Below are positions 3,795-49,575 of a stretch of DNA of 64,000 bases, piece after piece. Numbering within the stretch: the first letter of the stretch is position 1; the number at the start of each line of letters is the position of its first letter. A program made the position numbers and the translations under genes. Location of the stretch: sequence record NC_048182.1; one strand, given 5' to 3'. The notes beneath the pieces are model-generated. The model was not told the origin of the DNA and did not search any database. It worked only from the letters and a program-made list of their open reading frames with translations.

Positions 3795-3832
3795 CCTCCT
3801 ACCTCACCTTCGGGTGGGGTAGGGGGTTTTTG
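3795..3832 (+). terminator. intrinsic terminator after the capsid gene
   Basis: CCTCCTACCTCACC-TTCG-GGTGGGGTAGGGGG followed by a T-run. Confidence 0.85.
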
Positions 3833-3853
3833 CTGTTTTGGTTTTAGATCTCT

Positions 3854-19731: not shown

Positions 19732-19768
19732 CCCCTACCCTTCCTTTCGGAGGGGTAGGGGTTATGTT
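19732..19768. terminator. bidirectional terminator (36-bp identical copy at 35284)
   Basis: CCCCTACCCTTCC-TTTC-GGAGGGGTAGGGG between convergent genes. Confidence 0.85.
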
Positions 19769-19774
19769 GTGTTT

Positions 19775-21772: not shown

Positions 21773-22534
21773 ATGTCAAAAGATTCAAGGTTAGCTGTGT
21801 CCGCCATACTTACTTGGCCTTGGAACCCGTTCCAAGATTTGGTAAGTAACCGTGTCGTTGATGAACCAGCTCACATTAGTGGCACTGGCAACCTTATCAT
21901 CGTTCCACGTAACGGACCTTTCTTTACCCGTAACTTTAAGATCAAACTTAAAGCTACTGGGCGTGAGTTATCAATGGCCGCAGGTGAATACTCCTTTGTT
22001 CACCCATTCGGTAGTTTCATTGAGAACTACAGTCGTCTGGTTTACGGTGCTGTATTAGTCAAAGGTGTTTCCAGCCCTACAGATTATGTTATTGAGTATG
22101 ATACCATCGGTGGTAATTTCGTACTGGACGACATAGCTTATGCTGAAGCTGTAGCTAATACATTAACCGCAGCTCGTACAATTGATTGGTCCGAGTTAGT
22201 TAATCTCCCAGATGTCTGGCCACCAGATCCACATCCACATCCTGCTTCAGACACCATGAACTACGGTGACCTGATTGTCTGGATGCAGTCTTATCTGGAT
22301 GCTATTACCGACACTAACTCTTCTGTCACTTGGAAACAGCAATTTGAAGCTCACTTGGAAGCTGATCTTCAGAATGCTCACAAAGCCCAGCCGTCTGATA
22401 TTGGATTTGATAATCTAAAAGACTGGCCAATGTGTACAGAGGAAGACCTTCAAGGTCAGTCCACCGAAGTGTTGATGAACGTCTGGGGTGTTAAAGAACT
22501 GATCCGTTCCTTCTCTCGTGGTGAGTGGCGTTAA
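21773..22534 (+). CDS. virion/baseplate structural protein
   Basis: Likely start ATG 21773 (SD AGAGGA). It shares the 'W..L.N.P..W.P.PH.H......G..DL' module with the N-termini of the downstream fibre proteins. Confidence 0.65.
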   Translation: MSKDSRLAVSAILTWPWNPFQDLVSNRVVDEPAHISGTGNLIIVPRNGPFFTRNFKIKLKATGRELSMAAGEYSFVHPFGSFIENYSRLVYGAVLVKGVSSPTDYVIEYDTIGGNFVLDDIAYAEAVANTLTAARTIDWSELVNLPDVWPPDPHPHPASDTMNYGDLIVWMQSYLDAITDTNSSVTWKQQFEAHLEADLQNAHKAQPSDIGFDNLKDWPMCTEEDLQGQSTEVLMNVWGVKELIRSFSRGEWR

Positions 22535-22588: not shown

Positions 22589-25500
22589 ATGATCAAACAA
22601 GATATTCCTCTTTACAAGTTAGATCTCACAGGAAAGAGTGAGTTTAACCATGTTAAGTTGCAGGCAGGATCTCGTTTTGATGTCGCTCAACACCAAATCG
22701 TAATTCCACCAGGAGCACCGTTCTATCAGAAATCGATGAAGATTACTGATCCGGCAGGTAAGCTTTTGGTCTTAGGTGAAGATTACGAGTTCTACGGCAT
22801 CATGAATAAGCTGACGGCGTTTACAGCTCAACCCGTTGGTTTGTTCGTTCGTTTCTTGAAAGATGAAATCCGTGAGTGGGTTTGGGATTATCAGGTAGTA
22901 GGGAACTTTAATAAGTTAACCACCGAAATCCTGAACATGCTACACTCCATTTATGAAGATGACCGTTATGTCCTGTACGAGAACATCAAGAATAAACCGT
23001 TGTGGTTTGATCCTGAGGTTCACCAACACGATTTAACTTATGATATCTTCGGCTTTACTGATTTGGCTCGTGAGTTGACCCGTGTTGCAAATATCCAGGG
23101 GACACAGAAATCAGCCGCAGTTGGTTTCTTAGAAACATTCCGAGATCACATTGATTTCTATTGTGATTCTTATCGTGAATTACTACAGGGTATCATTACT
23201 AACCACGCCAGTCACAAATATGACCAGCATGCTGTTCGTAAAGAACACATTGGGCTTGCATTAGTGGATAACAACCTCACAGCGACTCTAGAAGAGACGT
23301 TAGAAGGTTTACGTGATGATCTATTCATTACTCCATACAACGCAGCCTTGGCTGTTACAGCGGCAGCTGGACGTAACGATAAGTTATACCCATCAGGTAA
23401 ACTTCCTTTACTGCGATACGGTTCTGATACCTTTATTCCTCCTACCATTTCTGGTAGCTTTGAAGGACTAGGTGCCCAAACCCGCCGTGTAGGTGGATTA
23501 GTCGAGTCAGATGGTACGATGCTGATTCTTCAACACCGCAATAACGGTAAGTATCGTGGGTTGTATTTTGTACGGTGTGCAAACTGGATGAGTCAAAGTG
23601 CCGAGTATGAGTTTACTTCATACATGTATACTCACCCAACAGCTACCGCAGATGGAGCTACCCTAGATACTATCATTAACGGGTCTAACCGTTACATTAT
23701 GGTTGTGGGTGATGCAGTTAAAAACATCTGGTACTACGCTGAGACACACGGAACGTTCAACCCGGATCGTCATATCCTCCGTCGCATTAGTGGACCTTGG
23801 GTAACCGAAGACCTGGCTAACCGCCCAAACCAGTGGAACCTCAACGCCGAAACTAAATGTGTGGTGCTTGCGGATGAAAACTACGCCGAAGGCTGGTCAA
23901 TCATCCAGACATACAACATCAGTACGTTTAATGAACGTCGTACTCTTCCACATACACCAAACTGGTATTGGGATAGATCGATAAACATCGATAACGCAGG
24001 GTATTCCATCATTTACTTTAAAGGGTTGAGTGCTCTGGGTGTTCGTTGTCGTATTGATTATACCCATGAAGTTTTTGGGAATAAAAACGATCACTATTTC
24101 ACGCCTTGGTGGCCAGAAGTTGATGATGACGGTACAGGTGGTAAGGGTGCTAATATTCACAGTTTATTTGCGCGGTACACTCGACCAACTAAATATCTTT
24201 GGATGCACCGTTCCCTCCATGCCATGTGGTTAAAGTCTGCGGCAAACACATTTAACCTTCGATTGACTATCACGGGTATCGATGATGCCGGTGTGTCTGG
24301 AAGACGGTTCATGTTCCCGACATTCCGTGGTCAATTACGATTTGAACAAATTGGTGCTGAGCAATGGTGTCATATCACTCCGCATGAAGATATGACCATG
24401 CCATTGATAAATCCAGATGACAGGAACGATACCAATCCGACCTATAAAAAATGGATAGAAAGCATCAACGCATACGAATATCCCGATAGTGCGGATCGTA
24501 TCGGTTCTTTTGTGGTTGATAGAGAGTTCTTGCATTTCTCGGATGGGTTTGGTAACTCTATTTTCCCTTCGGTATATTGCATGTTGAAAACACCTTACCT
24601 TAAAGATGCTGATGCAATATACCGTCAGCCTCCTCCAGGATCTGTCACTCGTTTCTATAAAGAAGGTGATGGCCGGTTAGTTTTCAATGAAGCAAACCCA
24701 TTGGGAATGACAGAGTCCTTTGTACTTCAGCGTTGGTTAAGTGCCGATACCACTAACTACGCTCAGACAGGGTTTTTGATTAAGCAGAATACCCCTGATG
24801 GTCCTGAATGGATATTCAGGCATTCCAGATTTGCTAATAGTAACTGGACCCACCTCCGCCCTACTGTTTCTTCTTCGTTTGGCGGAAAAGCGTATTCTCA
24901 CTGGCCGTTCTTGTCCTCAGTTCGTAAAACAAACTTAGGTCAACAAGTCAGGATGTCTCAATCGGTTCCACCTCCTAATGGGGTATCTGCAAATAACAGT
25001 TATACTCATTTATTTGGTGCGTCATGTAACACAACGGTGATGGGGACCAACAAAGGGTTTAACTCTGAAGGAACACGTGCTGACTATCTGTTGCCGTGGA
25101 CCACAGTAACCTCCATTGTTGGGAATGATGTTCAATTCCAACATCAGGAAGTGTTTAACGTTAAACGACTTGTTGAACAAGATCTTCTTGCCTTATTTAC
25201 GCCGTTTGGTTACACACTTAGTGATATACGCAAGACCTGGTCAATTAGTCAGACCATGGACCCAAGCGGAGCTATTAAGTTTGTTGCTGCGGTCAACCGT
25301 TTGGTCGGGCGTGATCTCCGAATGGCATTTGTTATTGGTACCGTAACTGGCCAAGGTGCAACAAGCACTACCGATGGTTATAAACTATGGGCTGATGCTA
25401 AATGGACTTCGCTGTCCCCTGTTACTGATAGACTGATCAATGACGTTGTTGAGTTAGGAACAGGATATAGTTATTGGGACCAGAACAGTAAGGACTCTGC

Positions 25501-26287
25501 TAAGTTAAACCATGGGCTGTGCCTAACAATTCCTTGGGAGAGTCGATCCCCTGACGGCTCGGTTGCAAGCGCCAATAGTTATACCATTTACCTGAGACAG
25601 TGCCAAGGATACTTCCCATCTGGCGGTGATGATATGGCCGCTGTTGTTATCGAGGTAAGCGCTGATTCAAGAACTATTTTGAATCATCAAAATACCTACG
25701 GTAGCATGTGGACAATGACCAACTCTTTGGAACCAATCCCAGAAACTGGTATTATCCGTACTCAATGGGCTATTGAGGTATTTGAGGGATCTGCCATTGC
25801 AGGCGGTCCAATTAACTCAACCCGTGTCTATGATGGTATTGCTGGTGATACGTACAGTCAATCTGGCGGATACATCGGGGCGACTAACATCATCACTCCT
25901 GCTTATACTGTTTACTTTAACCAGATAAAGAACATCCTGCTTGCGGGTAAGATGTACGATATCCCGTCGACCTATATCGACATACTTGATCAAGATCCGT
26001 CCCCTGCTGGTAAGACTTATTACGTCTACGTGTATTACTCCAACAACGTTGCTGAATACATTATTAGTCCAACCGTCAGACCAGAGTCATCAGTTCAATC
26101 GATGATTGCCACTGTAATTTGTGGACCTACTCAGATTGACCGCATTATTCCATATAACCGTTTCTCTATGAACGGTGTGGTAATTTCGGCCAAACGTCAA
26201 GGTTCTGCAATCCTTGCATCCAGTGGTTCGTCAGAAGGTGTTGGAGATACTTCCACCATTTTACTTGATAACGATTTTATTCCGTAA
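22589..26287 (+). CDS. tail fibre/baseplate protein, paralog 1
   Basis: 1232 aa. It has the fibre-type H..H.V....GL..VDN..TAT..E..G motif and PPTISGSFEGLG, shared with the next gene. Confidence 0.7.
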   Translation: MIKQDIPLYKLDLTGKSEFNHVKLQAGSRFDVAQHQIVIPPGAPFYQKSMKITDPAGKLLVLGEDYEFYGIMNKLTAFTAQPVGLFVRFLKDEIREWVWDYQVVGNFNKLTTEILNMLHSIYEDDRYVLYENIKNKPLWFDPEVHQHDLTYDIFGFTDLARELTRVANIQGTQKSAAVGFLETFRDHIDFYCDSYRELLQGIITNHASHKYDQHAVRKEHIGLALVDNNLTATLEETLEGLRDDLFITPYNAALAVTAAAGRNDKLYPSGKLPLLRYGSDTFIPPTISGSFEGLGAQTRRVGGLVESDGTMLILQHRNNGKYRGLYFVRCANWMSQSAEYEFTSYMYTHPTATADGATLDTIINGSNRYIMVVGDAVKNIWYYAETHGTFNPDRHILRRISGPWVTEDLANRPNQWNLNAETKCVVLADENYAEGWSIIQTYNISTFNERRTLPHTPNWYWDRSINIDNAGYSIIYFKGLSALGVRCRIDYTHEVFGNKNDHYFTPWWPEVDDDGTGGKGANIHSLFARYTRPTKYLWMHRSLHAMWLKSAANTFNLRLTITGIDDAGVSGRRFMFPTFRGQLRFEQIGAEQWCHITPHEDMTMPLINPDDRNDTNPTYKKWIESINAYEYPDSADRIGSFVVDREFLHFSDGFGNSIFPSVYCMLKTPYLKDADAIYRQPPPGSVTRFYKEGDGRLVFNEANPLGMTESFVLQRWLSADTTNYAQTGFLIKQNTPDGPEWIFRHSRFANSNWTHLRPTVSSSFGGKAYSHWPFLSSVRKTNLGQQVRMSQSVPPPNGVSANNSYTHLFGASCNTTVMGTNKGFNSEGTRADYLLPWTTVTSIVGNDVQFQHQEVFNVKRLVEQDLLALFTPFGYTLSDIRKTWSISQTMDPSGAIKFVAAVNRLVGRDLRMAFVIGTVTGQGATSTTDGYKLWADAKWTSLSPVTDRLINDVVELGTGYSYWDQNSKDSAKLNHGLCLTIPWESRSPDGSVASANSYTIYLRQCQGYFPSGGDDMAAVVIEVSADSRTILNHQNTYGSMWTMTNSLEPIPETGIIRTQWAIEVFEGSAIAGGPINSTRVYDGIAGDTYSQSGGYIGATNIITPAYTVYFNQIKNILLAGKMYDIPSTYIDILDQDPSPAGKTYYVYVYYSNNVAEYIISPTVRPESSVQSMIATVICGPTQIDRIIPYNRFSMNGVVISAKRQGSAILASSGSSEGVGDTSTILLDNDFIP

Positions 26288-26347: not shown

Positions 26348-29300
26348 ATGAAAGATATTGAAATTATCGACATCGACTATTCCGCCAAAGATCCTACTTT
26401 TAAGAAAGAGGATAAGGTTGTAGTCGCCAAGATCTCCGGACCTTGGATAATTCCTGAAGAGGGTCCCGTTTACGCGGATTCGGTCAGGGTTCTTAAAGGT
26501 GGGTTAGATCTTATTCCTGGAACAGACTTTGAACCAGTAGAAGAAGTCACAGACTTAACTTTAAAGACCGGTAAGAAAGTTGTTCTTTATATCCAGTTAA
26601 AACAACACATTATCAGCGGTGGTGGTGAACTGGATATGATTTACCAGCGTGTTGGGTTGCCGATTATTTCTACCAAGAAACTTATTGATACCTTGGAAGA
26701 AATGGTCATCAAAGGGAAACCTGTTGATTGGGATACCGGGGTTACTAACAAACCCGCTACTCAATATCCTTCCTGGCATAGTCACGATATTAAAAACTCT
26801 GCCGAGATGGTTGGGTTTGGTGGATTGGTAGAACTGTTTTCTCGTTTGACTTGGGAACAGAATACCGAAGGCAGTAAGATGCAGGCTCTGTTGACTCAAC
26901 TTCAAACAGAGATGTACTCCAAACTGGATTACACACGCAAGTTAAAGTGGGGTGCGATTATGACGCACTCACGCAACTATCGGAACCCCCATGGTGTAGT
27001 TCCTGGCGATGTAAACTCCGGTAACATTAATAACTTTGCTACCGCTACCCCGCAAGAGGACAGCGAAGGTCGTCGTTCTGATTTACGTTCAACCCCTGCT
27101 GGTCTGAGTCGTTTGATCTCAGAAGCCTCCCCAGTTACCGAAGACTACCTGGTTCAAAACGAATTACCGTTTGGTTATTACGGTTCAGGTATTTATCTTC
27201 CACCACCAATTACCGGCTCTTTCGAAGGCTTGGGTGGGGATATCGAAAACTCCGCATTTGTGCGTGAAGGTAACGGTTGGACTGTTGGACTTATTCGCGG
27301 TTACGATGGCCGTGTTAAAAACCTGTATTACGTATATACAGAAGACGTCAGAGATCGTTCCAACAGTTCACCATGGATCCATACTTATGTTCAGTATGTT
27401 CACCCTGCTATCACTGGTGCGGGTAAGCGTGCTAACATGGTTGTCTCTGGTTCAAACCAAGATGTGATCTGCCTGGGCGATGTTGCTTGGGGCGGTGACA
27501 GCATGGTGAAGGGGCGTGACCAGTTATGGATTGGTGTGACTAACTCCACTTTTGATCCAGCTTCGCACACCCTAAAGCCAATTGACATCGTAAACAAAGT
27601 TGTCGATAAAGCCGCTGCTGTTGGTGGAATATACAACATGCAGGCTGGCATGGGAACAATTGCTCGTGTGGGCGATTGGGTCTATTACATCCATTCATTC
27701 TCCGGCGCTACTGGTGATATCCCTGGCAACTACTTAGGTGGTGATCAGAACTGGCAGCAACACTTCTGGCGATTCAAGTATTCTGATTTAACAAACCCTG
27801 CTGTAACATCAATAGTTCTTCAGCCGGTTAACGTTACCTTTGATAACTTAGACCGTGAACGCCGTACTAACCAACCTGCTTTCTTTATGATCAAACATAA
27901 AGGAACCGGTACCAATGTTATTTCTGAAGGTGCGTTGAAATTCAGTCGTCCAGTTATCACTGCGGATAGTCACCGTCGTCGTCAGTTTCTTGTGGTTCCT
28001 AACCCGAACAACAAACGGTATGCACGAGTAAGGATACTCTTTGTTACATATACCACTATTAGAAACATTGGTGGGGATGGTACTCGCGGTTTGTGGCAAG
28101 ACTTGATTGTCGACTATGATTGGGATGTTGAAACCAACACGTGGACAATTGATAAAAACTGGCGCAAGCCTACCTTGGACATTGATGGTCCAGGGAACGG
28201 AACACTGACAGATATCAATGCGCCCTGGAACCAGTCATATAGCCATGCTTCTCATACCAACCAGTTTGTCTTTGTATCAGGAAGTTGGGTACCTGGTGTT
28301 GGTTACGTTTCAATGGGTTCTGTCCAGACAGGTGTACCGCCGTACATGATGTCGGTATCTTTGTTCAATGACGAAAACGATCCTACTCGTGACTTCTATT
28401 GGGCTAACCAACCGCCGTCTCGTTGGGACTCCGTTGGACGCTTTAATAACTTCAGATTGAAAATGGTCATGCGTTCGCCATTTGGTGTTGCTGGCTTCCC
28501 GCGTCATTACTCTGATCTTTATGCGCTGACTGACGGAACTCGCGCCACTCCAATTGAAGTTTTCTATGCGGAAAACGAAGCACAGAACCAACAGTACTTT
28601 TATCGTATTGCGGAAACGGTTGCCTCAGATAACGGATACGATTACCGTGAAACACTACAGTCTGATTTTATCGACAGACCTATCTATGGTCGTAAGACAA
28701 ACTCAAACTTTGGTGTTGTAAACGGGATGACCCAGAACGTTGGTACTACTAACCGCCCAATGCGCAAGAATGAACGATCATTCACCGCAGGACACATGAG
28801 TTATACCCGCACCAAGTTAATTGCTAACCCAGGTGCTGCACCAAGCTTCACATGGAAGATTAACGAGAGTGGGCAACAGGTAGCGCACTCTATCGAATCG
28901 AATGGTGACGTGATTGTTAACTTGGCGTATGACTGGCGTTATGATACTCCGACCAAAGTGTTGTTCTGTCGTCCGAACGCTAATAAGCAGGTTCGTATTC
29001 CTCGTTCATTGTGGCAGGATATGGTCCATAGTTCCATTGGAGCAGCAGACTTAGCTAAGACTTTGGATTACTCGGTATCGTTCTATATTGCAGATCAACC
29101 AGGTGGGGGTGAAACACCATACTCCCATTGGTGTGTACACTACCATACCACCGACGCTCCATCAATAACGCGTACTATCGCTGGTATCTTTACTTGGTCT
29201 GTTGTAACTACCATCAATGGTGTTCGTCAAATTAAGTTTGATGGAATGCAATATCCATTCAACCAGTCAGGCAACAAACAACGCCCATTAAGACCTGGTG

Positions 29301-30136
29301 TAACCACAAACATTTCTGCAGGTCCTGACCACCACGCTATTAACGCGGACGGTACATGGACTGGTGTGCTGTTTAGCACAGGTACTGATGTTAAGCATAC
29401 TCACATGGAGATTCTTGACAAAGGTGCAGGTGGTACGTCTAACATTGAAATGTGCTGGCAACCAGGTACTCAGATTAACGTAACGGGTAACATGACCGGT
29501 GACAAGTTCTTCCTGCGTATCCAAAACGGTGTGGTAATTGAGGGGTCGTTAGGTTGGTCCTCTAACCGTGCGTTTAACGCCGAGTTTAGTAACCAGGTGT
29601 TTGCTAATGCTCAACACGGTTGGTTGAATGGTGTTACGTCTGCAACCTCTGGTGGTGCTATTTGCTTACTGTCTCCATGGAACGGTCAGGAAACACCATT
29701 AGGTGCGGTAATGGATAAGTACATTATGTATGGGGCAACGTACGTTGAAGGTAACTGGTCAGTGTTCATTAACTCTGAAGTGACTGTAACCTTTAACGGT
29801 TTCTCAATGATGGCAAAAATGCAGAACTGGGATCTTCGTGATCTGTCCGATGTTTATAAAAATCAGACATTCTACATTTACTGTTGCGCCAATGGTTCGG
29901 GTGCGTACTATGAAGTTACAAAGATCTTGCGAGGTCATGATGCTAACAAGATCCTTGTGGCAACTGTTAAGACGGATGACTTCGGTATTGTAACCATTGA
30001 ACGTCGTCAAACCTTTACTATCTCCGGGTTCCCGATTACTCTGGCCCGCGACATGGGTGTTCCGGCATCTTCTGGTGCTGTAACTGAACAAGGTAACTAC
30101 AAGTTCTTAAAACGCAGCGAACTCTTTAGTGGTTAA
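26348..30136 (+). CDS. tail fibre/baseplate protein, paralog 2
   Basis: 1262 aa with H...NPHGV...N..TAT and PPPITGSFEGLG. Its C-terminal module is homologous to that of paralog 1. Confidence 0.7.
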   Translation: MKDIEIIDIDYSAKDPTFKKEDKVVVAKISGPWIIPEEGPVYADSVRVLKGGLDLIPGTDFEPVEEVTDLTLKTGKKVVLYIQLKQHIISGGGELDMIYQRVGLPIISTKKLIDTLEEMVIKGKPVDWDTGVTNKPATQYPSWHSHDIKNSAEMVGFGGLVELFSRLTWEQNTEGSKMQALLTQLQTEMYSKLDYTRKLKWGAIMTHSRNYRNPHGVVPGDVNSGNINNFATATPQEDSEGRRSDLRSTPAGLSRLISEASPVTEDYLVQNELPFGYYGSGIYLPPPITGSFEGLGGDIENSAFVREGNGWTVGLIRGYDGRVKNLYYVYTEDVRDRSNSSPWIHTYVQYVHPAITGAGKRANMVVSGSNQDVICLGDVAWGGDSMVKGRDQLWIGVTNSTFDPASHTLKPIDIVNKVVDKAAAVGGIYNMQAGMGTIARVGDWVYYIHSFSGATGDIPGNYLGGDQNWQQHFWRFKYSDLTNPAVTSIVLQPVNVTFDNLDRERRTNQPAFFMIKHKGTGTNVISEGALKFSRPVITADSHRRRQFLVVPNPNNKRYARVRILFVTYTTIRNIGGDGTRGLWQDLIVDYDWDVETNTWTIDKNWRKPTLDIDGPGNGTLTDINAPWNQSYSHASHTNQFVFVSGSWVPGVGYVSMGSVQTGVPPYMMSVSLFNDENDPTRDFYWANQPPSRWDSVGRFNNFRLKMVMRSPFGVAGFPRHYSDLYALTDGTRATPIEVFYAENEAQNQQYFYRIAETVASDNGYDYRETLQSDFIDRPIYGRKTNSNFGVVNGMTQNVGTTNRPMRKNERSFTAGHMSYTRTKLIANPGAAPSFTWKINESGQQVAHSIESNGDVIVNLAYDWRYDTPTKVLFCRPNANKQVRIPRSLWQDMVHSSIGAADLAKTLDYSVSFYIADQPGGGETPYSHWCVHYHTTDAPSITRTIAGIFTWSVVTTINGVRQIKFDGMQYPFNQSGNKQRPLRPGVTTNISAGPDHHAINADGTWTGVLFSTGTDVKHTHMEILDKGAGGTSNIEMCWQPGTQINVTGNMTGDKFFLRIQNGVVIEGSLGWSSNRAFNAEFSNQVFANAQHGWLNGVTSATSGGAICLLSPWNGQETPLGAVMDKYIMYGATYVEGNWSVFINSEVTVTFNGFSMMAKMQNWDLRDLSDVYKNQTFYIYCCANGSGAYYEVTKILRGHDANKILVATVKTDDFGIVTIERRQTFTISGFPITLARDMGVPASSGAVTEQGNYKFLKRSELFSG

Positions 30137-30174
30137 AATGGTGGGGCCTTCGGGCCCTTCTCATTCAGGAGATA

Positions 30175-33100
30175 TTGATGTATACTGATCCTACTAAACC
30201 GCTACCTATAGCTACGGAAAAGAAAGATTACATTGGTGTTGTTTATAAAGCGATCATCGAAATTGGTAATGCTCGTTATAACAATACCGGTAACATGGAA
30301 TCTCTAACCGAGAAGGTAGAGGCGGAGAAAACTCTGGCCGAGCAGCGTATCGCTAAGTTTGCAAGCGATACCGATATTGACCTTAAAGCTCACACTGATT
30401 TGCGTGGACCTGTTCACGGTGAAACAAAAGAAAGCGTGGGTTTGGGTAATGTCGATAACTGGCCTATGGCAACTGTAGCCGAACATAAAACAGGAACAGT
30501 CAAGAACAAGTTTGCACACCCAGAAGGTTTGGCCGCGCTTGTTAAAGATCGATTAACGATCAACCCTGACTTATATATCAGATCGCGTATTCTTCCATTG
30601 TCTTCTGGTGGTAATCTTGGATCTGTTCCTCAGATCGATTATCGTTGGACAGATGGTGATGTTGGTGACACACTTCTTGATCCATCTCAGTACTATGGCG
30701 ACACAGGCTTCTCATTTTCCACTGAGAACGGCGTCCGTGTTTATCCTAGTATGACTGGGGCTGAAGTGCTTACGCAGGTTGTGGCGAATCCTGGACAGCC
30801 TAAAACGGCTATTACTCCGTTAGGTGGAACACAGGTTCGTGTTTACAACCGTAACATCGATATTCGTCGTATGCGTCCATCGGTATTACGAGGTTTCTCA
30901 GATGTTGAACCTCAGGGTCGACTAATCCAGTCTTCACGTAACCTATTCGATCGTTCTGCACTTTTCTATATGGAAGGCGCTAATACGATGATTCGTTCCT
31001 TTAACAAGATCCGTCTTCCTTTTGATATCTTAAAAGCACCTGGTCGTGGCAAGAACTGGGATGGTATTGTTGAGAGCCGTGAGAACACGATTTACAACAT
31101 CCGTAGCTATTTTGTAAACCAGGATCTTGGTTGGGGAAATGACATCTATTTGGTTATTAAGACCGATGGGTTTAACTTTACCGATAATGGATTGGATTCT
31201 AAGAACGGACCAGGAACAGCAGCAGAAGTTATTGCCACCCTAGGTCAGGAATTTACCACCAAGAACTATACGCTTCCTGGTAACGGTAAGTTCCATACAT
31301 TTATTCATCCAGAAGGTGGAAATGCCATCTGTATTAAGCTTCGTGATATCATTGCCTATACCGATGCTCAGAAGGCTGATTTGTGGGATGCACTAAACAC
31401 CCGTGCTGGAACATCCATTTCCTTTGCCTGGTCTAACCGTTTAAAAGGTGTCTTTACTCTACGCATCCCTGTTGGGTTCTATAGTAAAGATAAGACTAAG
31501 TATACCAGCTACTACGTTGACCTCATGTACAGCTGTACAGAGACACCAGCAACCAAAACACTGGCAATCAATATTCAAACACTGCGTACTCTGGATGACA
31601 GTCTTCAGATTCTGTCTGCTAATCTCCAGGTTAATAAAGCAGGTCGTTTCATTGAATATCCAGCAAGTGTAGCGGCTAACCCATTTGACCCTCGTGTCTT
31701 CAATGGGTCTTTCGATTCAAACGGCGGACATGTTCGTGTTTACACGATGTACAACCGCCAGTATGTAGGTTATTACCAACACAACGTGGATAGTCCATTA
31801 ACATGGATTAATAACGGTGATACGATTCGACCTAACCTTGAGAAGTATCTATTCAAGCAAATGTCGACGATCAACAACGACGGTTTCTATGGAGACCATC
31901 TTCGTCATATCCCTGTTCGTCAAACAGATTCAACGAATGAATACATAACGTTGACACGCGACTGGTTGAACGAATACCGCTGGTGTTATACCACAGTGGC
32001 CTTGGATACCGAAGTTGCTCCTGTGACTGCCGCTGGCCGGAATATAGGACCTAAGCGTATCACTAACGAGTGGTTCGATCCACCGAGTGGAGGTATTCCT
32101 TCATTCGTTATTTCCAATGAAGAATCAGCTGATGTGATTAGCTCGCTTCCTCATGTGTTTAACACCCAGAACCAGTTTAAAGGTTACGGTGTTTACCAGT
32201 TATCCAGCGATACTAAAAACCCGATTTCATTTAGTGGCGTTTTAGATATCGATGATGCAATCTTGAACTGGGTTGCTATTAACGGTGGTGGTTGGGCAAC
32301 GAGTCATAAACAGCTATTCTATTACCGTAATCAGTTGTTCTGGTTCTCTCAAACAACATCTCCTGCTGAAATTAAAGCAGATGGTACTGATTGTTACTAT
32401 GGTGTTATCACTAACATCATTATTGATACAGTGGGTACAAAGACAGTACTGAAAGTAAACGGTAACGTTGCTACTAATGCGACAGTTAAACCGCTCAAGG
32501 TAAACACTAAAGCTACCTTGTCTGTTGATCGTAAAACAATTAACGGGCTTGACTCCTTTGATGCGACTGATGTTTACATCATGCGTACTGGTGTGGCGGC
32601 TGGTGTGACTACACGCCTGTGTATGGTAAACCTTGGTCCTTTCAACAACATCTATTTACCATTTAACATCACCAGTAACTCGGCAGGCGTCTATGACATC
32701 AATCCAGTCACTACAGGACTCCTGGATCCATTCTTCACTTATGGTGCTGATGGATTTGCTGTGGACTATGATAAGCTGATTGGTTACGGTGTTAAAAGCC
32801 CAGACCGTCTGCATGTCAATATGCAGTCTCCAGTTATGTTGAATAAGGTGATGTGGACTTTAGGTAAAACCCCAGGTAACTACCAACTGTTCTCTGAAAC
32901 TCGTGGTAACTTGATTGCCAATAACGGCATCATGAATAACTACGAAGGGACATGTATTTATCCAGTTGGGTCAGTTGTTACTGTGGGTGGGTCTAACGTA
33001 CCGATTAAGAAGCCATTGATTGCAAATACGTCTGACTATCCTGATGATGAACTGATGGTGACTCTTGATGGTTCTATTCCTGTCTTGTACAGTAAACAGA

Positions 33101-35277
33101 ACAACCCTAAAGCTTATCCAATAGAACCAAACTCTGGTTGTGTTCCTGCTGGGTTCCTTCAGGGAAGTACATTCCGTTACTTTGACGCAGATGGTTGGAA
33201 GAACTCACTCCTTCCAGTGATTGATGGGTTTGCCATGAACTTCTACGGTTATGGCTCATCCTTCCCTGCATTCATGGGGACCTTTGGCGCACAAGCTCCG
33301 ATCAACCGTTTCTTCCTCCAACAGAAAGCAACTGTTCTTACTTGGAACACCTCAGTTGGCAGACGAATCAATATTGGTGCAGGTTCTAACGTTACCATTA
33401 AAGTTAACAGTGCCGCACAAACTTACGATGGGTCTGGTATCTTCAACATCCCTGGTTCCTTCACCGGAAACGTGACCGTTGAGATCACTGGTATGAGTTC
33501 TTATGTTTGGTCTGCTGGTCTGGTGGAGATCATCCAGTTTGGTTCATTGATTAGCTCTCTGAACTTTGCAGGGTGTGCCGCATTTAAATGTACTCCTACC
33601 CCTCCTGCATCGATTAAGAACTACTCTGGGCTGTTTGCAGGATCCACAGCTTCCGCCATTGATGGAATGCAAAACTGGAACGTATCCGCTGTAACGAACA
33701 TGTCGGGAATGTTCCAAGGTGCGATTAACTTTAACCAGAGTCTGAACAGTTGGAACACCAGTAACGTCACCAATATGAGCGCGATGTTCAGAGGGTGTAC
33801 GGTATATAACCAGCCAATGGGTAACTGGAACGTCGCTAAGGTAGAAACCTTTGAGAACATGTTCCGTGATGCACAGGCCTTCAACCAAGCACTTCCTTGG
33901 AACACTGCCCGTTGTTGGGTGTTCAGAAGTATGTTCAGAGGTGCATTAGCCTTTAACGGCAACATCTCTAACTGGAACGTAGGGTCTGGCGCTGACTTCA
34001 GTTACATGTTTGAAGGATGTGCTGCATTCAACATTGCACTGCAATCCTGGCGTCCTGCTTCTGCCACAACAATGAAAGGTATGTTTAAGAATACCACAGT
34101 GTTTAACAGCTTACTTACTGGCTGGTACTTCCCTGTGCTTCTCGACGTATCTGAAATGTTCATGAATGCGAAAGCATTTAACCGGTCATTAGCGGGATGG
34201 GTTACTACAAGTTGGATTAACACTGCATCCATGTTTGAAGGCACAGTTGCCTTTGGCGCAAATGGTGAGTGTCCTCTGTCCAGCTTCAACATGTCTAAAG
34301 TTACCAATGCTTATCGCATGTTTAACGGTTCTAACTTTAACTCTGCTATCAGTGTTTGGAGTTTTGGTTCTGCTGCTAACATTGCTGAGATGTTTGGTCA
34401 CACTACTAACTTCAACCAGTCTGTCGCTGATTGGGATGTTAGTAACGTTCTTAATGCCGCTAACATGTTTAACCACGCTGCTGCCTATAACAAAGATATG
34501 GGCGGTATGAATTGGGTTGGATGCGCTGACTTCACAGGTATGTTCCAAGAGACAACTGTATTCGATGGTGATTTGTCAAATTGGACGTTCATGGAAAGTG
34601 GTGAGATTGTTACTGAGAGTATGTTTGCCGGAGCCAAAGCCTTCACAGGTAAAGGTCTCGAAACCTGGGACACTATTAGCTTTGTTAATATGTCCGGAAT
34701 GTTCAAATCAGCCCTTGCCTTTAATGGGAATGTGAGTTCTTGGAATGTCTCTAACGTTATTACGTTCTTTGAAGCATTCTACGAAACTACGGTATTTGAT
34801 CAAGACCTTAGTTCATGGACTCCGGTTTCTGGTGTTAACTTCAGAAACATGTTCAGATTGGCAATTGTCTTCAATTGTGATCTGGATAGTTGGAATATGT
34901 CCAACGCTACAGACATTTCGGATATGTTCCGTGAAGCTGCTGCGTTTAATGGATTGGTCGGAACGTGGGATACTTCTAACGTAACTGTGATGAACGGAAC
35001 GTTTGTATCTGCGGTATCGTTTAACCAAGACGTGAGTGAATGGGATACTTCTAAAGTTACCAACTTTACTCAAACATTCGGTGGTTGTCCATTATTCAAT
35101 CAGGATATCTCTGGTTGGGACACAGGTGAAGCAACTACCATGGAAGGAATGTTCAATGGTGCTGCTGCGTTCAACCAGGACCTTTCTGGATGGAACGTGG
35201 CCAAAGTTACTAACCATATTAACTTTGACACTAACACAACGGCTTGGGTGCTACCTAAACCAAACTTCGTATCATAA
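30175..35277 (+). CDS. tail fibre protein, paralog 3, with a C-terminal DUF285/BspA-like repeat domain
   Basis: 1700 aa. N-terminal H..LRGPVHGETKESVGLGNVDNWPMAT fibre motif; the C-terminal ~540 aa are W-x-x-S-x-V-T-x-M-x-x-M-F...F-N repeats. Confidence 0.75.
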   Translation: MMYTDPTKPLPIATEKKDYIGVVYKAIIEIGNARYNNTGNMESLTEKVEAEKTLAEQRIAKFASDTDIDLKAHTDLRGPVHGETKESVGLGNVDNWPMATVAEHKTGTVKNKFAHPEGLAALVKDRLTINPDLYIRSRILPLSSGGNLGSVPQIDYRWTDGDVGDTLLDPSQYYGDTGFSFSTENGVRVYPSMTGAEVLTQVVANPGQPKTAITPLGGTQVRVYNRNIDIRRMRPSVLRGFSDVEPQGRLIQSSRNLFDRSALFYMEGANTMIRSFNKIRLPFDILKAPGRGKNWDGIVESRENTIYNIRSYFVNQDLGWGNDIYLVIKTDGFNFTDNGLDSKNGPGTAAEVIATLGQEFTTKNYTLPGNGKFHTFIHPEGGNAICIKLRDIIAYTDAQKADLWDALNTRAGTSISFAWSNRLKGVFTLRIPVGFYSKDKTKYTSYYVDLMYSCTETPATKTLAINIQTLRTLDDSLQILSANLQVNKAGRFIEYPASVAANPFDPRVFNGSFDSNGGHVRVYTMYNRQYVGYYQHNVDSPLTWINNGDTIRPNLEKYLFKQMSTINNDGFYGDHLRHIPVRQTDSTNEYITLTRDWLNEYRWCYTTVALDTEVAPVTAAGRNIGPKRITNEWFDPPSGGIPSFVISNEESADVISSLPHVFNTQNQFKGYGVYQLSSDTKNPISFSGVLDIDDAILNWVAINGGGWATSHKQLFYYRNQLFWFSQTTSPAEIKADGTDCYYGVITNIIIDTVGTKTVLKVNGNVATNATVKPLKVNTKATLSVDRKTINGLDSFDATDVYIMRTGVAAGVTTRLCMVNLGPFNNIYLPFNITSNSAGVYDINPVTTGLLDPFFTYGADGFAVDYDKLIGYGVKSPDRLHVNMQSPVMLNKVMWTLGKTPGNYQLFSETRGNLIANNGIMNNYEGTCIYPVGSVVTVGGSNVPIKKPLIANTSDYPDDELMVTLDGSIPVLYSKQNNPKAYPIEPNSGCVPAGFLQGSTFRYFDADGWKNSLLPVIDGFAMNFYGYGSSFPAFMGTFGAQAPINRFFLQQKATVLTWNTSVGRRINIGAGSNVTIKVNSAAQTYDGSGIFNIPGSFTGNVTVEITGMSSYVWSAGLVEIIQFGSLISSLNFAGCAAFKCTPTPPASIKNYSGLFAGSTASAIDGMQNWNVSAVTNMSGMFQGAINFNQSLNSWNTSNVTNMSAMFRGCTVYNQPMGNWNVAKVETFENMFRDAQAFNQALPWNTARCWVFRSMFRGALAFNGNISNWNVGSGADFSYMFEGCAAFNIALQSWRPASATTMKGMFKNTTVFNSLLTGWYFPVLLDVSEMFMNAKAFNRSLAGWVTTSWINTASMFEGTVAFGANGECPLSSFNMSKVTNAYRMFNGSNFNSAISVWSFGSAANIAEMFGHTTNFNQSVADWDVSNVLNAANMFNHAAAYNKDMGGMNWVGCADFTGMFQETTVFDGDLSNWTFMESGEIVTESMFAGAKAFTGKGLETWDTISFVNMSGMFKSALAFNGNVSSWNVSNVITFFEAFYETTVFDQDLSSWTPVSGVNFRNMFRLAIVFNCDLDSWNMSNATDISDMFREAAAFNGLVGTWDTSNVTVMNGTFVSAVSFNQDVSEWDTSKVTNFTQTFGGCPLFNQDISGWDTGEATTMEGMFNGAAAFNQDLSGWNVAKVTNHINFDTNTTAWVLPKPNFVS
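33658..35250 (+). repeat. ~21 tandem ~25-aa DUF285/BspA-like repeats
   Basis: WNVSAVTNMSGMFQGAINFNQSLNS / WNTSNVTNMSAMFRGCTVYNQPMGN / ... / WDTGEATTMEGMFNGAAAFNQDLSG, counted by hand. Confidence 0.85.
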
Positions 35278-35283
35278 CAAACA

Positions 35284-35319
35284 CCCTACCCTTCCTTTCG
35301 GAGGGGTAGGGGTTATGTT
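35284..35319. terminator. bidirectional terminator (identical to 19733..19768)
   Basis: CCCTACCCTTCC-TTTC-GGAGGGGTAGGGGTTATGTT between convergent genes. Confidence 0.85.
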
Positions 35320-35326
35320 TTGTTTG

Positions 35327-36304
35327 TTATTCAGGTACGGATGTTTTACTTCCACCAGACTGTACGTTACCATGACGGTGACCGAGGTAACGAATGTTGT
35401 CGATAGTCCAGCCGCCTTCAACGCTACCGGCACCACCCATTTGACTGAAGGAACCTTGAACTGCAACAGGACCTTCAACAGAGTAACTACCTTTCTGGTT
35501 ATAATTACCTTCGTGGGTTATATTCCCTTGAATCAGAATTTCAGGAGACACCCAAGTGCTTTTCTTAGTGTTGATCTTAATGGAGTTGTCTGCCTTAATA
35601 GTAAGGTCAGTGCACTGCATATCAATCTTCTCTTTGCCTTTGAGCAACATGTTGCGCTCACAAGAAAGAGTAATATCTTTCTTTTCAATATTAATGAAAG
35701 ACTTCTCATCATTGATAAAAGAGAAAGCATGTTCCATAGAGTTAATGGATAGGATATTGTTCTCACCATCTACAATACCAAACTGAGCATTACCGGTATC
35801 TAAACTGATTACATAACTGGTTGGTTCACCATTACCCTGACCGGTTACTAACTGAATCATTTTCTTATGAGAGCTAATCATAAAGATATAATAGTTCTCA
35901 GGAGTAACTGGTGTGTTCTCATTAACCTTAGGAGAAGCAGAGAAGGCGTAGATAACAGTTTCAAGACGTAACGTACCGTCCATACCAAAGTAAGTCCACA
36001 GATATTTATTAGTACCTTGGAATTTATAGACGACTACTTTAGAACCTTTACGCACATCTGGAGAGGTTACACGGTTAGTATTTAACGCCATCCATTTACA
36101 TGGAACCGAGTTACTCTGTAAAGTAGTACTGGAGGATGCATCTCCTGCAGGTGATTCAGTATCTACTTTTTTAGTTTCAGCTGTGGTTGTAACTTCGCCA
36201 TCGGCTTCTGGGAAATGCAACGGTAAGTACACTTGTATTTCGTCTGTGTCAGTGTCTTTATCCATTGCAACTACGCCAACGCCGTAGCATTCTAAGACAT
36301 TCAT
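35327..36304 (-). CDS. baseplate central spike / tail tip protein (gp5/gpV/gp138-like)
   Basis: 325 aa: an OB-fold-like N-terminus, repeated short beta-strands (beta-helix), and C-terminal YLGHRHGNVQSGGSKT carrying the HxH metal-binding tip of contractile-tail spikes. Confidence 0.75.
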   Translation of the reverse strand: MNVLECYGVGVVAMDKDTDTDEIQVYLPLHFPEADGEVTTTAETKKVDTESPAGDASSSTTLQSNSVPCKWMALNTNRVTSPDVRKGSKVVVYKFQGTNKYLWTYFGMDGTLRLETVIYAFSASPKVNENTPVTPENYYIFMISSHKKMIQLVTGQGNGEPTSYVISLDTGNAQFGIVDGENNILSINSMEHAFSFINDEKSFINIEKKDITLSCERNMLLKGKEKIDMQCTDLTIKADNSIKINTKKSTWVSPEILIQGNITHEGNYNQKGSYSVEGPVAVQGSFSQMGGAGSVEGGWTIDNIRYLGHRHGNVQSGGSKTSVPE

Positions 36305-49523: not shown

Positions 49524-49552
49524 CCCAACTACCTCCATTAGGGGTAGTTGGG
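49524..49552 (+). terminator. intrinsic terminator
   Basis: CCCAACTACCTC-CATTA-GGGGTAGTTGGG followed by a T-rich tract. Confidence 0.75.
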
Positions 49553-49575
49553 ATTATACTTTATTTTTATTTTGC

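What the first reader, a model, noticed from the sequence alone, without database searches (positions are those of the whole stretch)
33480..35277. Phage tail fibre tipped with a ~21-repeat DUF285/BspA-like solenoid with diversified central repeats
Seen: after an N-cap (IIQFGSLISSLNFAGCAAF..TPTPPASIKNYSGLF) come ~21 repeats of ~25 aa and a C-cap (NHINFDTNTTAWVLPKPNF). End repeats are canonical (WNVSNVTNMSGMF). Central ones keep W...MF...FN but vary widely at the exposed positions (WNTARCWVFRSMF, WRPASATTMKGMF, WYFPVLLDVSEMF, WVTTSWINTASMF). Established: DUF285/BspA-type repeats are typical of bacterial surface proteins such as those of mollicutes. Inference: a captured LRR-like scaffold used as an antibody-like, repeat-shuffling receptor-binding domain, unlike the usual beta-helix depolymerase or gp38 tips.
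Basis: partly seen in the sequence, partly recalled or inferred. Interest (0 to 1): 0.7.

Follow-up and report, generated by a model that had tools for sequence, protein, structure and literature searches.

The report
Jumbo-phage tail protein with PARCEL/DUF285 solenoid
The repeats are real: a 1699-residue protein in the tail/baseplate gene cluster of Edwardsiella jumbo phage pEt-SU ends in about 21 DUF285 (PARCEL) repeats, an optional add-on module with one swap-prone stretch that probably helps the phage stick to its host, though nobody has tested this.

Summary
The window is Edwardsiella phage pEt-SU, and the finding lies in gene pETSU_084 (window 30178-35277). [quoted passage not shown]

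**Observation confirmed.** Pfam DUF285 scores E=1e-130. There are 20 full ~25-residue repeats plus degenerate N- and C-caps. AlphaFold gives a confident LRR-like solenoid (pLDDT 94.7).

**Interpretation partly supported.**
- **Tail protein:** the gene is the third large gene of a cluster conserved across phiKZ-like phages, next to a baseplate gene. It shares an N-terminal unit with tail-fibre proteins.
- **Separable module:** syntenic orthologues carry 0, a few, ~20, ~30 or ~59 repeats.
- **Which repeats vary:** The variable stretch is the distal repeats, aa 1393-1620, which are as low as 0-57% identical in relatives 68-80% identical overall.
- **How they vary:** a second subclade shows a replaced cassette with saturated synonymous divergence, which points to recombination. 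I found no repeat shuffling, no dN/dS above 1 and no diversity-generating retroelement.
- **Competing candidate:** the neighbour gp082 is more variable still.

Virion presence and host binding remain untested. The best reading is an accessory host-adhesion module.

The parts
30167..30171 (+). Shine-Dalgarno AGGAG, 6 nt before the ATG of gp084
30178..35277 (+). Gene pETSU_084 (gp084), 1699 aa plus stop. Intact, with no breaks. [quoted passage not shown]
   Evidence: phrog_17273 covers the full length.
30304..30585 (+). N-terminal tail-fibre-type unit, aa 43-136. It is shared with gp083 and gp082 and with tail or virion proteins of EL, RisingSun, Goslar and others.
   Evidence: hhalign probability 91%, E=1e-6 against the gp083 family. 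phrog_2163 and phrog_14667 match. tblastn hits are. Goslar gp025 carries at least 5 copies and ends in Peptidase_S74.
30586..33315 (+). Body, aa 137-1046. Mostly beta, with predicted beta-propeller-like domains. Restricted to OBP/pEt-SU-like and related Aeromonas jumbo phages. It is a complete protein on its own in some of them.
   Evidence: AF2 pLDDT 71. Foldseek gives WD40/propeller hits at low TM. tblastn. Body-only orthologues.
33316..33525 (+). Small all-beta linker domain, aa 1047-1116, between the body and the solenoid. It is the first part of the optional module.
   Evidence: About 9 strands in the AF2 tip model at pLDDT about 90-95. Absent from PS1 gp126, P0024 and P0025.
33526..33672 (+). 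N-cap: two degenerate repeat units, aa 1117-1165
33673..34353 (+). Conserved among close relatives.
   Evidence: 50-100% identity per repeat in P0001-P0010, with block means of 65-83%. Orthology is 1:1 and collinear.
34354..35037 (+). Distal nine repeats, aa 1393-1620: the hypervariable, mosaic cassette region
   Evidence: As low as 0-57% identity in relatives that are 68-80% identical overall, with a patchwork pattern. aa 1393-1545 has no recognisable orthologous repeat in P0002-P0010. dN is 2.4-4.4 times that of the body.
35038..35274 (+). Last two repeats plus C-cap, aa 1621-1699. This is the most conserved part of the array across the whole clade.
   Evidence: 49-62% mean identity even in distant orthologues. 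The C-cap is retained in every DUF285-bearing orthologue, including ZPAH34 and D3.
35284..35325 (.). Intrinsic terminator: a 12-bp stem with 8 G-C pairs, then a T-run. It lies between the convergent genes gp084 and gp085.
   Evidence: The same 42-nt element occurs at 19733-19774 and 3797-3838.
21773..22534 (+). gp081, 253 aa, first gene of the cluster. GenBank: 'putative tail fiber protein'. 87-94% conserved in close relatives.
22589..26287 (+). gp082, 1232 aa, a cluster partner with the shared N-terminal domain. Its aa ~400-1100 is the most variable stretch of the cluster.
26348..30136 (+). gp083, 1262 aa, a cluster partner with the shared N-terminal domain
35327..36304 (-). gp085, baseplate assembly protein (phrog_3216). 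Its position is conserved in pEt-SU, OBP, Survivor, Kc263, PS1, D3, ZPAH34, RisingSun and EL.

Best explanation
gp084 is most likely a virion protein attached at the baseplate, the third of three large tail-fibre-like proteins. It has four parts:
1. A short N-terminal attachment unit of the kind repeated in tail fibres.
2. A beta-propeller-rich body that can exist on its own.
3. A small beta linker.
4. A C-terminal PARCEL/DUF285 LRR-like solenoid of about 23 coils, roughly 11 nm long.

The solenoid is an optional accessory adhesion module.
- Its proximal nine repeats and its last repeats plus C-cap are a conserved scaffold.
- The block in between (aa 1393-1620 in pEt-SU) is a ligand-contacting surface.
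- In evolution that block is exchanged by recombination between related phages, and the array grows or shrinks by whole repeats.
- The module probably binds a variable host-surface structure. It would act alongside the even more variable gp082, which may be the main specificity determinant.

**Shown:** domain identity, fold prediction, modularity, synteny, the variability pattern and the recombinational origin of one cassette.

**Inferred:** virion location, oligomeric state, and that the variable block binds the host.
For: **Identity and fold**
- DUF285 E=1e-130.
- AF2 solenoid at pLDDT 94.7.
- The listed PDB Foldseek hits are almost all LRR proteins: TLR13, plant LRR receptor kinases, CroV588 and BACOVA_04585.

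**Tail context**
- The order gp081-082-083-084, then a convergent baseplate assembly gene, is conserved in OBP, Survivor, Kc263, PS1, D3, ZPAH34, RisingSun and EL.
- The N-terminal unit is homologous to gp083 (hhalign 91%) and to proteins annotated 'minor tail protein' or 'virion structural protein'.
- The same unit is tandemly repeated in Goslar gp025, which ends in the tail-fibre chaperone domain Peptidase_S74.

**Modularity**
- PS1 gp126, P0024 and P0025 stop at the position of aa ~1046.
- Repeat numbers at the syntenic gene: PS1 0; ZPAH34 a few; pEt-SU, OBP, Kc263 and Survivor about 20; Yubaba 29; Sureiya 31; D3 about 59.

**Localised variability**
- The only hot spot in gp084 is aa ~1393-1620.
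- dN there is 2.4-4.4 times that of the body.

**Independent replicate**
- Yubaba versus P0018 is 90-98% identical everywhere outside aa ~1101-1500.
- Within aa 1201-1500 identity is 47-73%, and dS is saturated there. This marks an imported cassette.

**Associations elsewhere**
- In bacteria, DUF285 arrays occur with PKD, cadherin, FN3 and T9SS-sorting domains, which is a surface-adhesin architecture.
- Two DUF285 proteins were detected in purified particles of the algal virus AaV (PMC7507832).
Against: - No proteomic or imaging evidence places gp084 or any orthologue in a virion.
- In the OBP record, gp143 and gp144 are 'putative virion structural protein' but the orthologue gp145 is only 'hypothetical protein'. 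RisingSun gp99/gp100 versus gp101 shows the same contrast. This may mean the protein was not detected by mass spectrometry.
- The OBP paper (PMC3264338) is not held, so I could not check this.
- gp082 aa 400-1100 is more variable than any part of gp084, so gp084 need not set host range.
- Body-only phages infect hosts without the module.
- The body is not predicted to be fibrous.
- dN/dS stays far below 1 and dS is near saturation, so positive selection is not shown.
- No ligand is known for any DUF285 domain, and there is no solved structure by sequence search.
Confidence: 0.5

Rival explanations
1. The solenoid is a structural element of the virion, such as a strut, spacer or contact between fibres or with the sheath or baseplate. 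It is not a receptor binder. The distal block varies because it is weakly constrained.
For: - The proximal repeats, with their odd repeat-specific residues, are strongly conserved among close relatives. That fits a fixed protein-protein contact.
- dN/dS in the hot spot is only 0.1-0.24.
- Array length is very plastic, from 0 to ~59 repeats, which could tune a length.
- gp082 is the better specificity candidate.
Against: - Relaxed constraint alone does not explain a sharply bounded replaced cassette inside an otherwise 90-98% identical protein.
- It also does not explain why the variable block sits between conserved caps in two subclades.
- A module that is dispensable in PS1-type phages is unlikely to be a core structural strut.
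Confidence: 0.15
2. The module mediates adhesion to something other than the infection receptor. Candidates are mucus, biofilm matrix, particles or non-host surfaces, by analogy with Ig-like decoration domains. This would raise the encounter rate rather than decide host range.
For: - The module is optional.
- It co-exists with two other large fibre-like proteins.
- DUF285 arrays are widespread in surface proteins of marine Bacteroidota and algae and in giant viruses and cyanophages.
Against: - The orthologues occur in phages of soil, plant, water and gut bacteria with no common non-host substrate.
- Cassette replacement between close relatives is the pattern expected for a target that itself varies between strains.
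Confidence: 0.12
3. gp084 is not a virion component. It acts inside or on the infected cell, for example as an LRR-type protein-binding factor, and merely sits in the tail gene cluster.
For: - The OBP and RisingSun orthologous or syntenic genes are annotated 'hypothetical' while their neighbours are 'putative virion structural'.
- No proteomic evidence was found.
Against: - It has an N-terminal unit shared with tail-fibre proteins.
- It sits in an operon-like arrangement with gp081-083 and shares a terminator with the baseplate gene.
- It is 1699 aa and has a conserved syntenic position across the family.
- By eye, the first residues are not hydrophobic enough for a signal peptide or membrane anchor. 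I ran no predictor.
Confidence: 0.1
4. One reading: the central degenerate repeats form an antibody-like paratope, diversified by shuffling of repeats on a scaffold recently captured from bacteria.
For: - The central repeats (aa 1240-1366) do deviate most from the canonical repeat.
- Repeat number does vary between relatives.
Against: - Those repeats are 56-96% conserved in P0001-P0010.
- Recognisable repeats are collinear in every relative.
- Intragenic repeats are old: at most 52% protein identity, with no long DNA identity.
- There is no DGR-like template repeat in the window.
- No close bacterial donor exists, as the nearest arrays are 27-42% identical.
- The fusion is clade-wide.
Confidence: 0.05

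Closest known systems
PARCEL / DUF285 (PF03382, TIGR02167) repeat surface proteins of Mollicutes, Listeria and Bacteroidota, named 'BspA family LRR surface protein' by NCBI
   Same: - The same ~25-residue repeat, well above the family thresholds.
- Tandem arrays of variable length.
- Open antisense frames, as the PARCEL paper notes (PMC2996958).
   Different: - By eye, no lipoprotein signal.
- No T9SS or PKD partner domains.
- Below the cutoff of the Mbov_0838 lipoprotein family, 274 against 500 bits.
- Here the array is fused to a phage tail-cluster protein.
- Dyad symmetry of the DNA is only weak.
Modular phage tail fibres and receptor-binding proteins with a conserved N-terminal anchor and exchangeable C-terminal binding domain (for example T-even long-fibre tips; Goslar gp025 with Peptidase_S74)
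   Same: - A conserved N-terminal unit shared with cluster partners.
- A variable distal part.
- Mosaic exchange between relatives.
- Location beside baseplate genes.
   Different: - The binding module is an LRR-like solenoid, not a beta-helix, a gp38-type adhesin or a knob.
- No Peptidase_S74 chaperone.
- The body is propeller-like, not a fibrous trimer shaft.
- Variation is an internal cassette between conserved caps, not a whole-tip swap.
Lamprey variable lymphocyte receptors and other LRR binders such as Listeria internalins (analogy from general knowledge, not tested)
   Same: - A solenoid with conserved N- and C-caps flanking a variable number of variable internal repeats.
- Diversity is generated by replacing internal cassettes.
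   Different: - No sequence relationship.
- Here the exchange is evolutionary recombination between phage genomes, not a somatic or programmed process.
- No mechanism for directed diversification was found.
phiKZ gp131, a baseplate-periphery protein with a beta-propeller domain (recalled from memory)
   Same: A large protein of a phiKZ-related phage tail cluster with a predicted beta-propeller-like body.
   Different: It did not come back in any search. No PDB sequence hit was found, and it is not among the top 50 listed Foldseek PDB hits. The likeness is an untested lead only.
DUF285 proteins of other viruses: Vibrio jumbo phages (pir03), Sphingomonas phage PAU, cyanophage ACG-2014f and Aureococcus anophagefferens virus
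   Same: - The same repeat family.
- Two AaV DUF285 proteins are packaged in particles.
   Different: Different host proteins and contexts. None shares the gp084 body, and none has a tested function.

Membership tests
DUF285 / PARCEL repeat (PF03382, TIGR02167) | Score above the curated thresholds of the family models | tested here: met
   PF03382 scores 429 bits against 25, in 5 stretches. TIGR02167 scores 79 bits against 30.
DUF285 / PARCEL repeat (PF03382, TIGR02167) | Tandem ~25-26-residue periodicity with a conserved amphipathic core | tested here: met
   20 full repeats of 24-28 aa. The W, MF and FN core positions have near-zero entropy.
DUF285 / PARCEL repeat (PF03382, TIGR02167) | Dyad symmetry of the coding DNA, the 'palindromic' in PARCEL | tested here: inconclusive
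   There are 14 inverted 7-mer pairs within 75 nt, against 6.7 +/- 3.3 in codon shuffles; 10 of 300 shuffles reach 14. The non-repeat body is also mildly enriched. Only short, weak inverted repeats were found.
Mbov_0838-type PARCEL surface lipoprotein (NF045896) | Whole-protein score above the curated cutoff | tested here: not met
   274 bits against a cutoff of 500.
BspA-type LRR (Pfam LRR_5, as in Tannerella BspA; family assignment from memory) | A match to an LRR family model other than DUF285 | tested here: not met
   DUF285 is the only Pfam family reported at E<=0.01. The 'BspA family' label is NCBI's name for DUF285 proteins.
Phage tail fibre / receptor-binding protein | Encoded in the tail/baseplate module with conserved synteny | tested here: met
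Phage tail fibre / receptor-binding protein | N-terminal region homologous to known tail or virion proteins | tested here: met
   phrog_2163 and phrog_14667. hhalign 91% to the gp083 family. Goslar gp025 carries Peptidase_S74.
Phage tail fibre / receptor-binding protein | Distal part variable or mosaic among close relatives | tested here: met
Phage tail fibre / receptor-binding protein | Fibrous or beta-helical trimeric shaft | tested here: inconclusive
   The monomer AF2 model of aa 1-1046 is propeller-like at pLDDT 71. The N-terminal 240 aa are low-confidence helices. Oligomeric state was not modelled.
Phage tail fibre / receptor-binding protein | Physically present in the virion | not testable with these tools
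   No proteomic data were found. The OBP paper is not held. The OBP annotation of gp145 is 'hypothetical protein'.
Phage tail fibre / receptor-binding protein | Binds the host cell surface | not testable with these tools
   None.
DGR-diversified receptor-binding protein (Mtd-like) | A template repeat near-identical to the variable region, plus a reverse transcriptase | tested here: not met
   No direct repeat of 40 nt or more in the 64-kb window involves the gene body. Only the window was searched, not the whole genome.
Tail spike/fibre with a C-terminal intramolecular chaperone (Peptidase_S74) | A PF13884 match at the C-terminus | tested here: not met
   Absent from gp084. Present in Goslar gp025 under the same kind of search.

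The most novel reading that the evidence does not exclude
The PARCEL/DUF285 solenoid on the third baseplate-cluster protein of OBP/pEt-SU-like jumbo phages is a true receptor-binding domain of a new structural class. It would be an LRR-type scaffold with fixed caps and an internal cassette. Phages would retune it by exchanging the cassette and by changing repeat number (0 to ~59). That would make it an evolutionary counterpart of LRR-based immune receptors, and the first assigned function for DUF285.
Probability: 0.35. Interest if true: 0.65.

Novelty: new variant of a known kind. Interest (0 to 1): 0.45.

Why it matters
DUF285/PARCEL is a very large family. More than 6700 long proteins scored E<=1e-20 in one search. 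It has no known ligand, and no solved relative was found by sequence search.

Here it sits in a context where its role can be read from comparative data:
- a syntenic phage tail-cluster gene whose array is absent, short, medium or very long in related phages;
- one sharply bounded replaced cassette.

If the module is a host adhesin, it would add an LRR-type fold to the known repertoire of phage receptor-binding domains. It would also give a first functional handle on DUF285 in bacteria, algae and giant viruses.

If it is not, the finding is an already annotated repeat protein of unknown function. In that case gp082 is the better place to look for host specificity in this phage.

Tried and rejected
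- **PDB by sequence.** Single-sequence searches found nothing for the tip or the body, and a profile of the full-length family (A2) found nothing either.
- **Foldseek.**
  - The tip gives only generic LRR hits at low TM.
  - The body gives generic WD40/propeller, inulosucrase and ulvan-lyase hits at TM 0.1-0.2. I draw no enzymatic conclusion from these.
- **Pfam on neighbours.** Nothing for gp080-083, gp085 or the PS1 neighbours.
- **DGR idea.** Rejected. No template-like repeat in the window.
- **Intramolecular chaperone idea.** Rejected. No Peptidase_S74.
- **Positive selection.** Synonymous sites are near saturation even for the 91% relative (dS 0.3-1.4). The ratios (0.02-0.24) only show relatively faster protein change in the distal block, not dN/dS above 1.
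- **Repeat shuffling.** Rejected by the best-match and offset test.
- **Recent bacterial donor.** None found. The nearest arrays are 27-42% identical.
- **Literature.**
  - No open paper links BspA/DUF285 to a phage receptor-binding protein. Searches returned 0 to 3 papers, none relevant.
  - The N1M2, ZPAH34 and Kc263 papers have no virion proteomics.
  - The OBP paper with the virion mass-spectrometry table is not held.
- **Consensus lines.** The alignment tool printed consensus lines. While reasoning I copied part of one once and drew a provisional clade-wide conservation inference from it, then set it aside. No claim here rests on it, and no consensus appears in notes, scripts or this report. 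All conservation figures come from identity counts.
- **Model coordinates.** I could not map variable positions onto the faces of the solenoid.


Full report
**1. Where we are**

The 5.1-kb query is 100% identical to Edwardsiella phage pEt-SU (MK689364.1, 276.7 kb, genus Petsuvirus). This is a phiKZ-related jumbo phage of a bacterium. Window position equals record position minus 62000.

[quoted passage not shown] The gene is intact, and nothing in this region is broken. It runs from ATG 30178 to the stop codon at 35275-35277 and encodes 1699 aa. An AGGAG sits 6 nt upstream, and a strong hairpin terminator follows at 35284-35311.

**2. The observation**

- Pfam DUF285 scores E=1.1e-130. NCBIfam's PARCEL repeat model TIGR02167 is also above threshold.
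- Two degenerate N-cap units lie at aa 1117-1165, twenty full repeats at aa 1166-1670, and a C-cap at aa 1671-1699.
- A repeat HMM built from the gene's own repeats finds 21 units.
- One quoted string differs from the sequence by one residue. All the others are exact.

**3. Fold**

An AlphaFold2 model of aa 1040-1699, using 23 orthologues, has mean pLDDT 94.7. It shows a small all-beta domain at aa ~1050-1130, then a regular solenoid with one short strand per repeat.

Against the PDB, the listed Foldseek hits are almost all leucine-rich-repeat proteins: TLR13, plant LRR receptor kinases, CroV588 and the Bacteroides protein BACOVA_04585. TM-scores are low because the curvature differs. Sequence searches of the PDB find nothing.

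Against predicted viral structures, the hits are other 'BspA/26-residue repeat' proteins of jumbo phages, cyanophages and giant algal viruses.

About 23 coils at the usual ~4.8 Å rise of a parallel beta solenoid give a length of roughly 11 nm. This length is an inference.

**4. Rest of the protein and neighbourhood**

*The cluster.* gp081, gp082, gp083 and gp084 are co-directional with gaps of 41-60 nt. A baseplate assembly gene (phrog_3216) follows on the other strand, then an SbcC-like gene.

This order is kept in OBP, Survivor, Kc263, Aeromonas PS1, D3 and ZPAH34. It is also kept in the more distant RisingSun and EL, where the third large gene shares only its N-terminus with gp084.

*The N-terminal unit.*
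- aa 43-136 of gp084 match aa 178-270 of gp083 in a profile-profile comparison (probability 91%, E=1e-6).
- They also match proteins annotated 'minor tail protein' or 'virion structural protein' in many related phages.
- In E. coli phage Goslar, the same ~55-residue unit occurs at least five times in gp025. That protein ends in the tail-fibre chaperone domain Peptidase_S74.

This is the best evidence here that gp084 belongs to the tail-fibre lineage.

*The body.* The body (aa 137-1046) is restricted to OBP/pEt-SU-like and related Aeromonas phages. It is predicted to be mostly beta, with propeller-like domains (pLDDT 71). It is not a classical fibrous shaft.

**5. The solenoid is an optional module**

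Aeromonas phage PS1 gp126 (1174 aa, same synteny) and the metagenomic proteins P0024 and P0025 (1057-1058 aa) end exactly where pEt-SU aa ~1046 lies. No alternative tip follows.

| Phage | Repeats at the syntenic gene |
|---|---|
| PS1 | 0 |
| ZPAH34 (1309 aa) | a few |
| pEt-SU, OBP, Kc263, Survivor | about 20 |
| Yubaba | 29 |
| Sureiya | 31 |
| Aeromonas D3 gp155 (2676 aa) | about 59 |

Every version that has repeats keeps the same C-cap.

**6. Which repeats vary**

I compared pEt-SU with ten metagenomic relatives, P0001-P0010, that are 68-91% identical overall.
- The body and repeats up to aa 1366 are conserved, at 56-100% per block.
- aa 1393-1620 falls as low as 0-57% in P0002-P0010. The pattern is a patchwork that does not follow overall relatedness.
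- For aa 1393-1545, the best-matching repeat anywhere in those relatives is at the background level between repeats (32-60%). All recognisable repeats are collinear, so nothing is shuffled.
- dN in the distal block is 2.4-4.4 times that of the body.
- dN/dS is 0.11-0.23 in the distal block against 0.05-0.06 in the body. Synonymous sites are near saturation.
- Across distant orthologues, only the last repeats and the C-cap stay clearly above background.

**7. An independent replicate**

Serratia phage Yubaba and the metagenomic P0018 are 90-98% identical outside aa ~1101-1500. Within aa 1201-1500 they are 47-73% identical. There, dN rises 10- to 25-fold and dS is saturated, against 0.2-1.1 in the flanks. 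This marks a cassette imported by recombination, not local hypermutation.

Yubaba and Sureiya were isolated on the same host strain. They have no such hot spot, but they differ by two repeats.

**8. What does not fit 'antibody-like shuffling'**

- Repeats within the gene are old. They are at most 52% identical in protein, with a median of 36%. They share only 26-35-nt DNA stretches at 60-81% identity.
- No DGR-type template repeat exists in the window.
- No close non-phage donor exists. The nearest foreign arrays are 27-42% identical. They come from Bacteroidota, picoalgae and other phages.

**9. Caveats on function**

- I found no proteomic or imaging data for any orthologue.
- The OBP and RisingSun records label the orthologous or syntenic gene 'hypothetical' while its neighbours are 'putative virion structural protein'. 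I could not read the OBP paper.
- Within the cluster, gp082 aa ~400-1100 is more variable than any part of gp084. It is 20-43% identical in relatives whose gp082 N-terminus is 72-96% identical. gp082 may therefore be the main specificity determinant.
- Kc263 virions show visible fibres, while N1M2 images do not.

**10. Most likely mechanism**

gp084 is most likely a baseplate-attached virion protein whose C-terminal PARCEL solenoid is an accessory adhesion module.
- The conserved proximal repeats and the terminal cap form the scaffold.
- The internal block is the exposed, exchangeable binding surface.
- Related phages retune it by cassette replacement and by gaining or losing whole repeats.

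Shown here are the domain identity, fold prediction, modularity, synteny, variability map and the recombinational origin of one cassette. Inferred are virion location, copy number, oligomeric state and binding to the host. Confidence is about 0.5.

They are listed with their evidence in the rival explanations.

**11. Novelty**

The gene, its family (phrog_17273) and its DUF285 label are already in public records. The role of DUF285 in a phage tail protein is untested. The comparative picture found here was not described in the papers I could search. That picture is an optional module, 0 to ~59 repeats, and an internal replaced cassette between conserved caps.

I rate it a new variant of a known kind: a modular phage host-recognition protein that uses an LRR-type PARCEL solenoid. 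Interest is moderate.

**12. Rule compliance**

While reasoning I copied part of one consensus line that the alignment tool printed, then set it aside (see Tried and rejected). All proposed follow-up is descriptive.

Noticed in passing
window 3797-3838, 19733-19774, 35284-35325 (weaker copy at 49534-49574): A 42-nt G+C hairpin plus T-run element recurs at gene ends. The copies at 19733 and 35284 are 98% identical. It looks like a shared intrinsic, probably bidirectional, terminator cassette of this phage.
   Followed up: partly
window 22589-26287 (gp082), about nt 23786-25888: gp082 aa ~400-1100 is the most variable stretch of the whole tail-fibre cluster. It is 20-43% identical in relatives whose gp082 N-terminal 400 aa are 72-96% identical and last ~130 aa 80-86% identical. 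This makes it a stronger host-specificity candidate than gp084.
   Followed up: partly
window 33544-35063, minus strand: Seven antisense ORFs of 73-119 aa overlap the repeat array. Two antisense frames have only 8 stops in 505 codons, against 14-30 in the two most open antisense frames of each body window. The PARCEL paper mentions this property. It is most likely a by-product of the repeat's codon composition, not genes.
   Followed up: partly
L015:1-8031 (Aeromonas phage D3 gp155): The syntenic orthologue is 2676 aa with about 59 DUF285 repeats and the same C-cap. Its record note calls it a 'putative chitinase', but Pfam finds only DUF285.
   Followed up: yes
L011 / L012 (P0018 versus Serratia phage Yubaba), aa 1201-1500 of the orthologue: A sharply bounded replaced cassette of about 12 repeats lies inside a protein that is otherwise 90-98% identical. 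Synonymous divergence is saturated only there.
   Followed up: yes
L004, L005, L006 (metagenome contigs carrying P0001, P0002, P0025): Three independent assemblies end 37-45 nt after the stop codon of the orthologue. That is at the position of the terminator hairpin in pEt-SU, so the hairpin or local strain variation may break assemblies.
   Followed up: no
L009:14616-15200 (Kosakonia phage Kc263): An extra 194-aa minus-strand gene sits between the gp084 orthologue and the baseplate gene. It is absent from pEt-SU, OBP and Survivor.
   Followed up: no
window 30143-30158: A short G+C hairpin lies between the stop of gp083 and the ribosome-binding site of gp084. It may be a partial terminator or attenuator within the cluster.
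   Followed up: no
L016:6353-8401 (Goslar gp025): The ~55-residue unit present once in gp084 (aa ~58-123) is tandemly repeated at least five times in this Peptidase_S74-bearing fibre. It is a repeat unit in its own right.
   Followed up: partly
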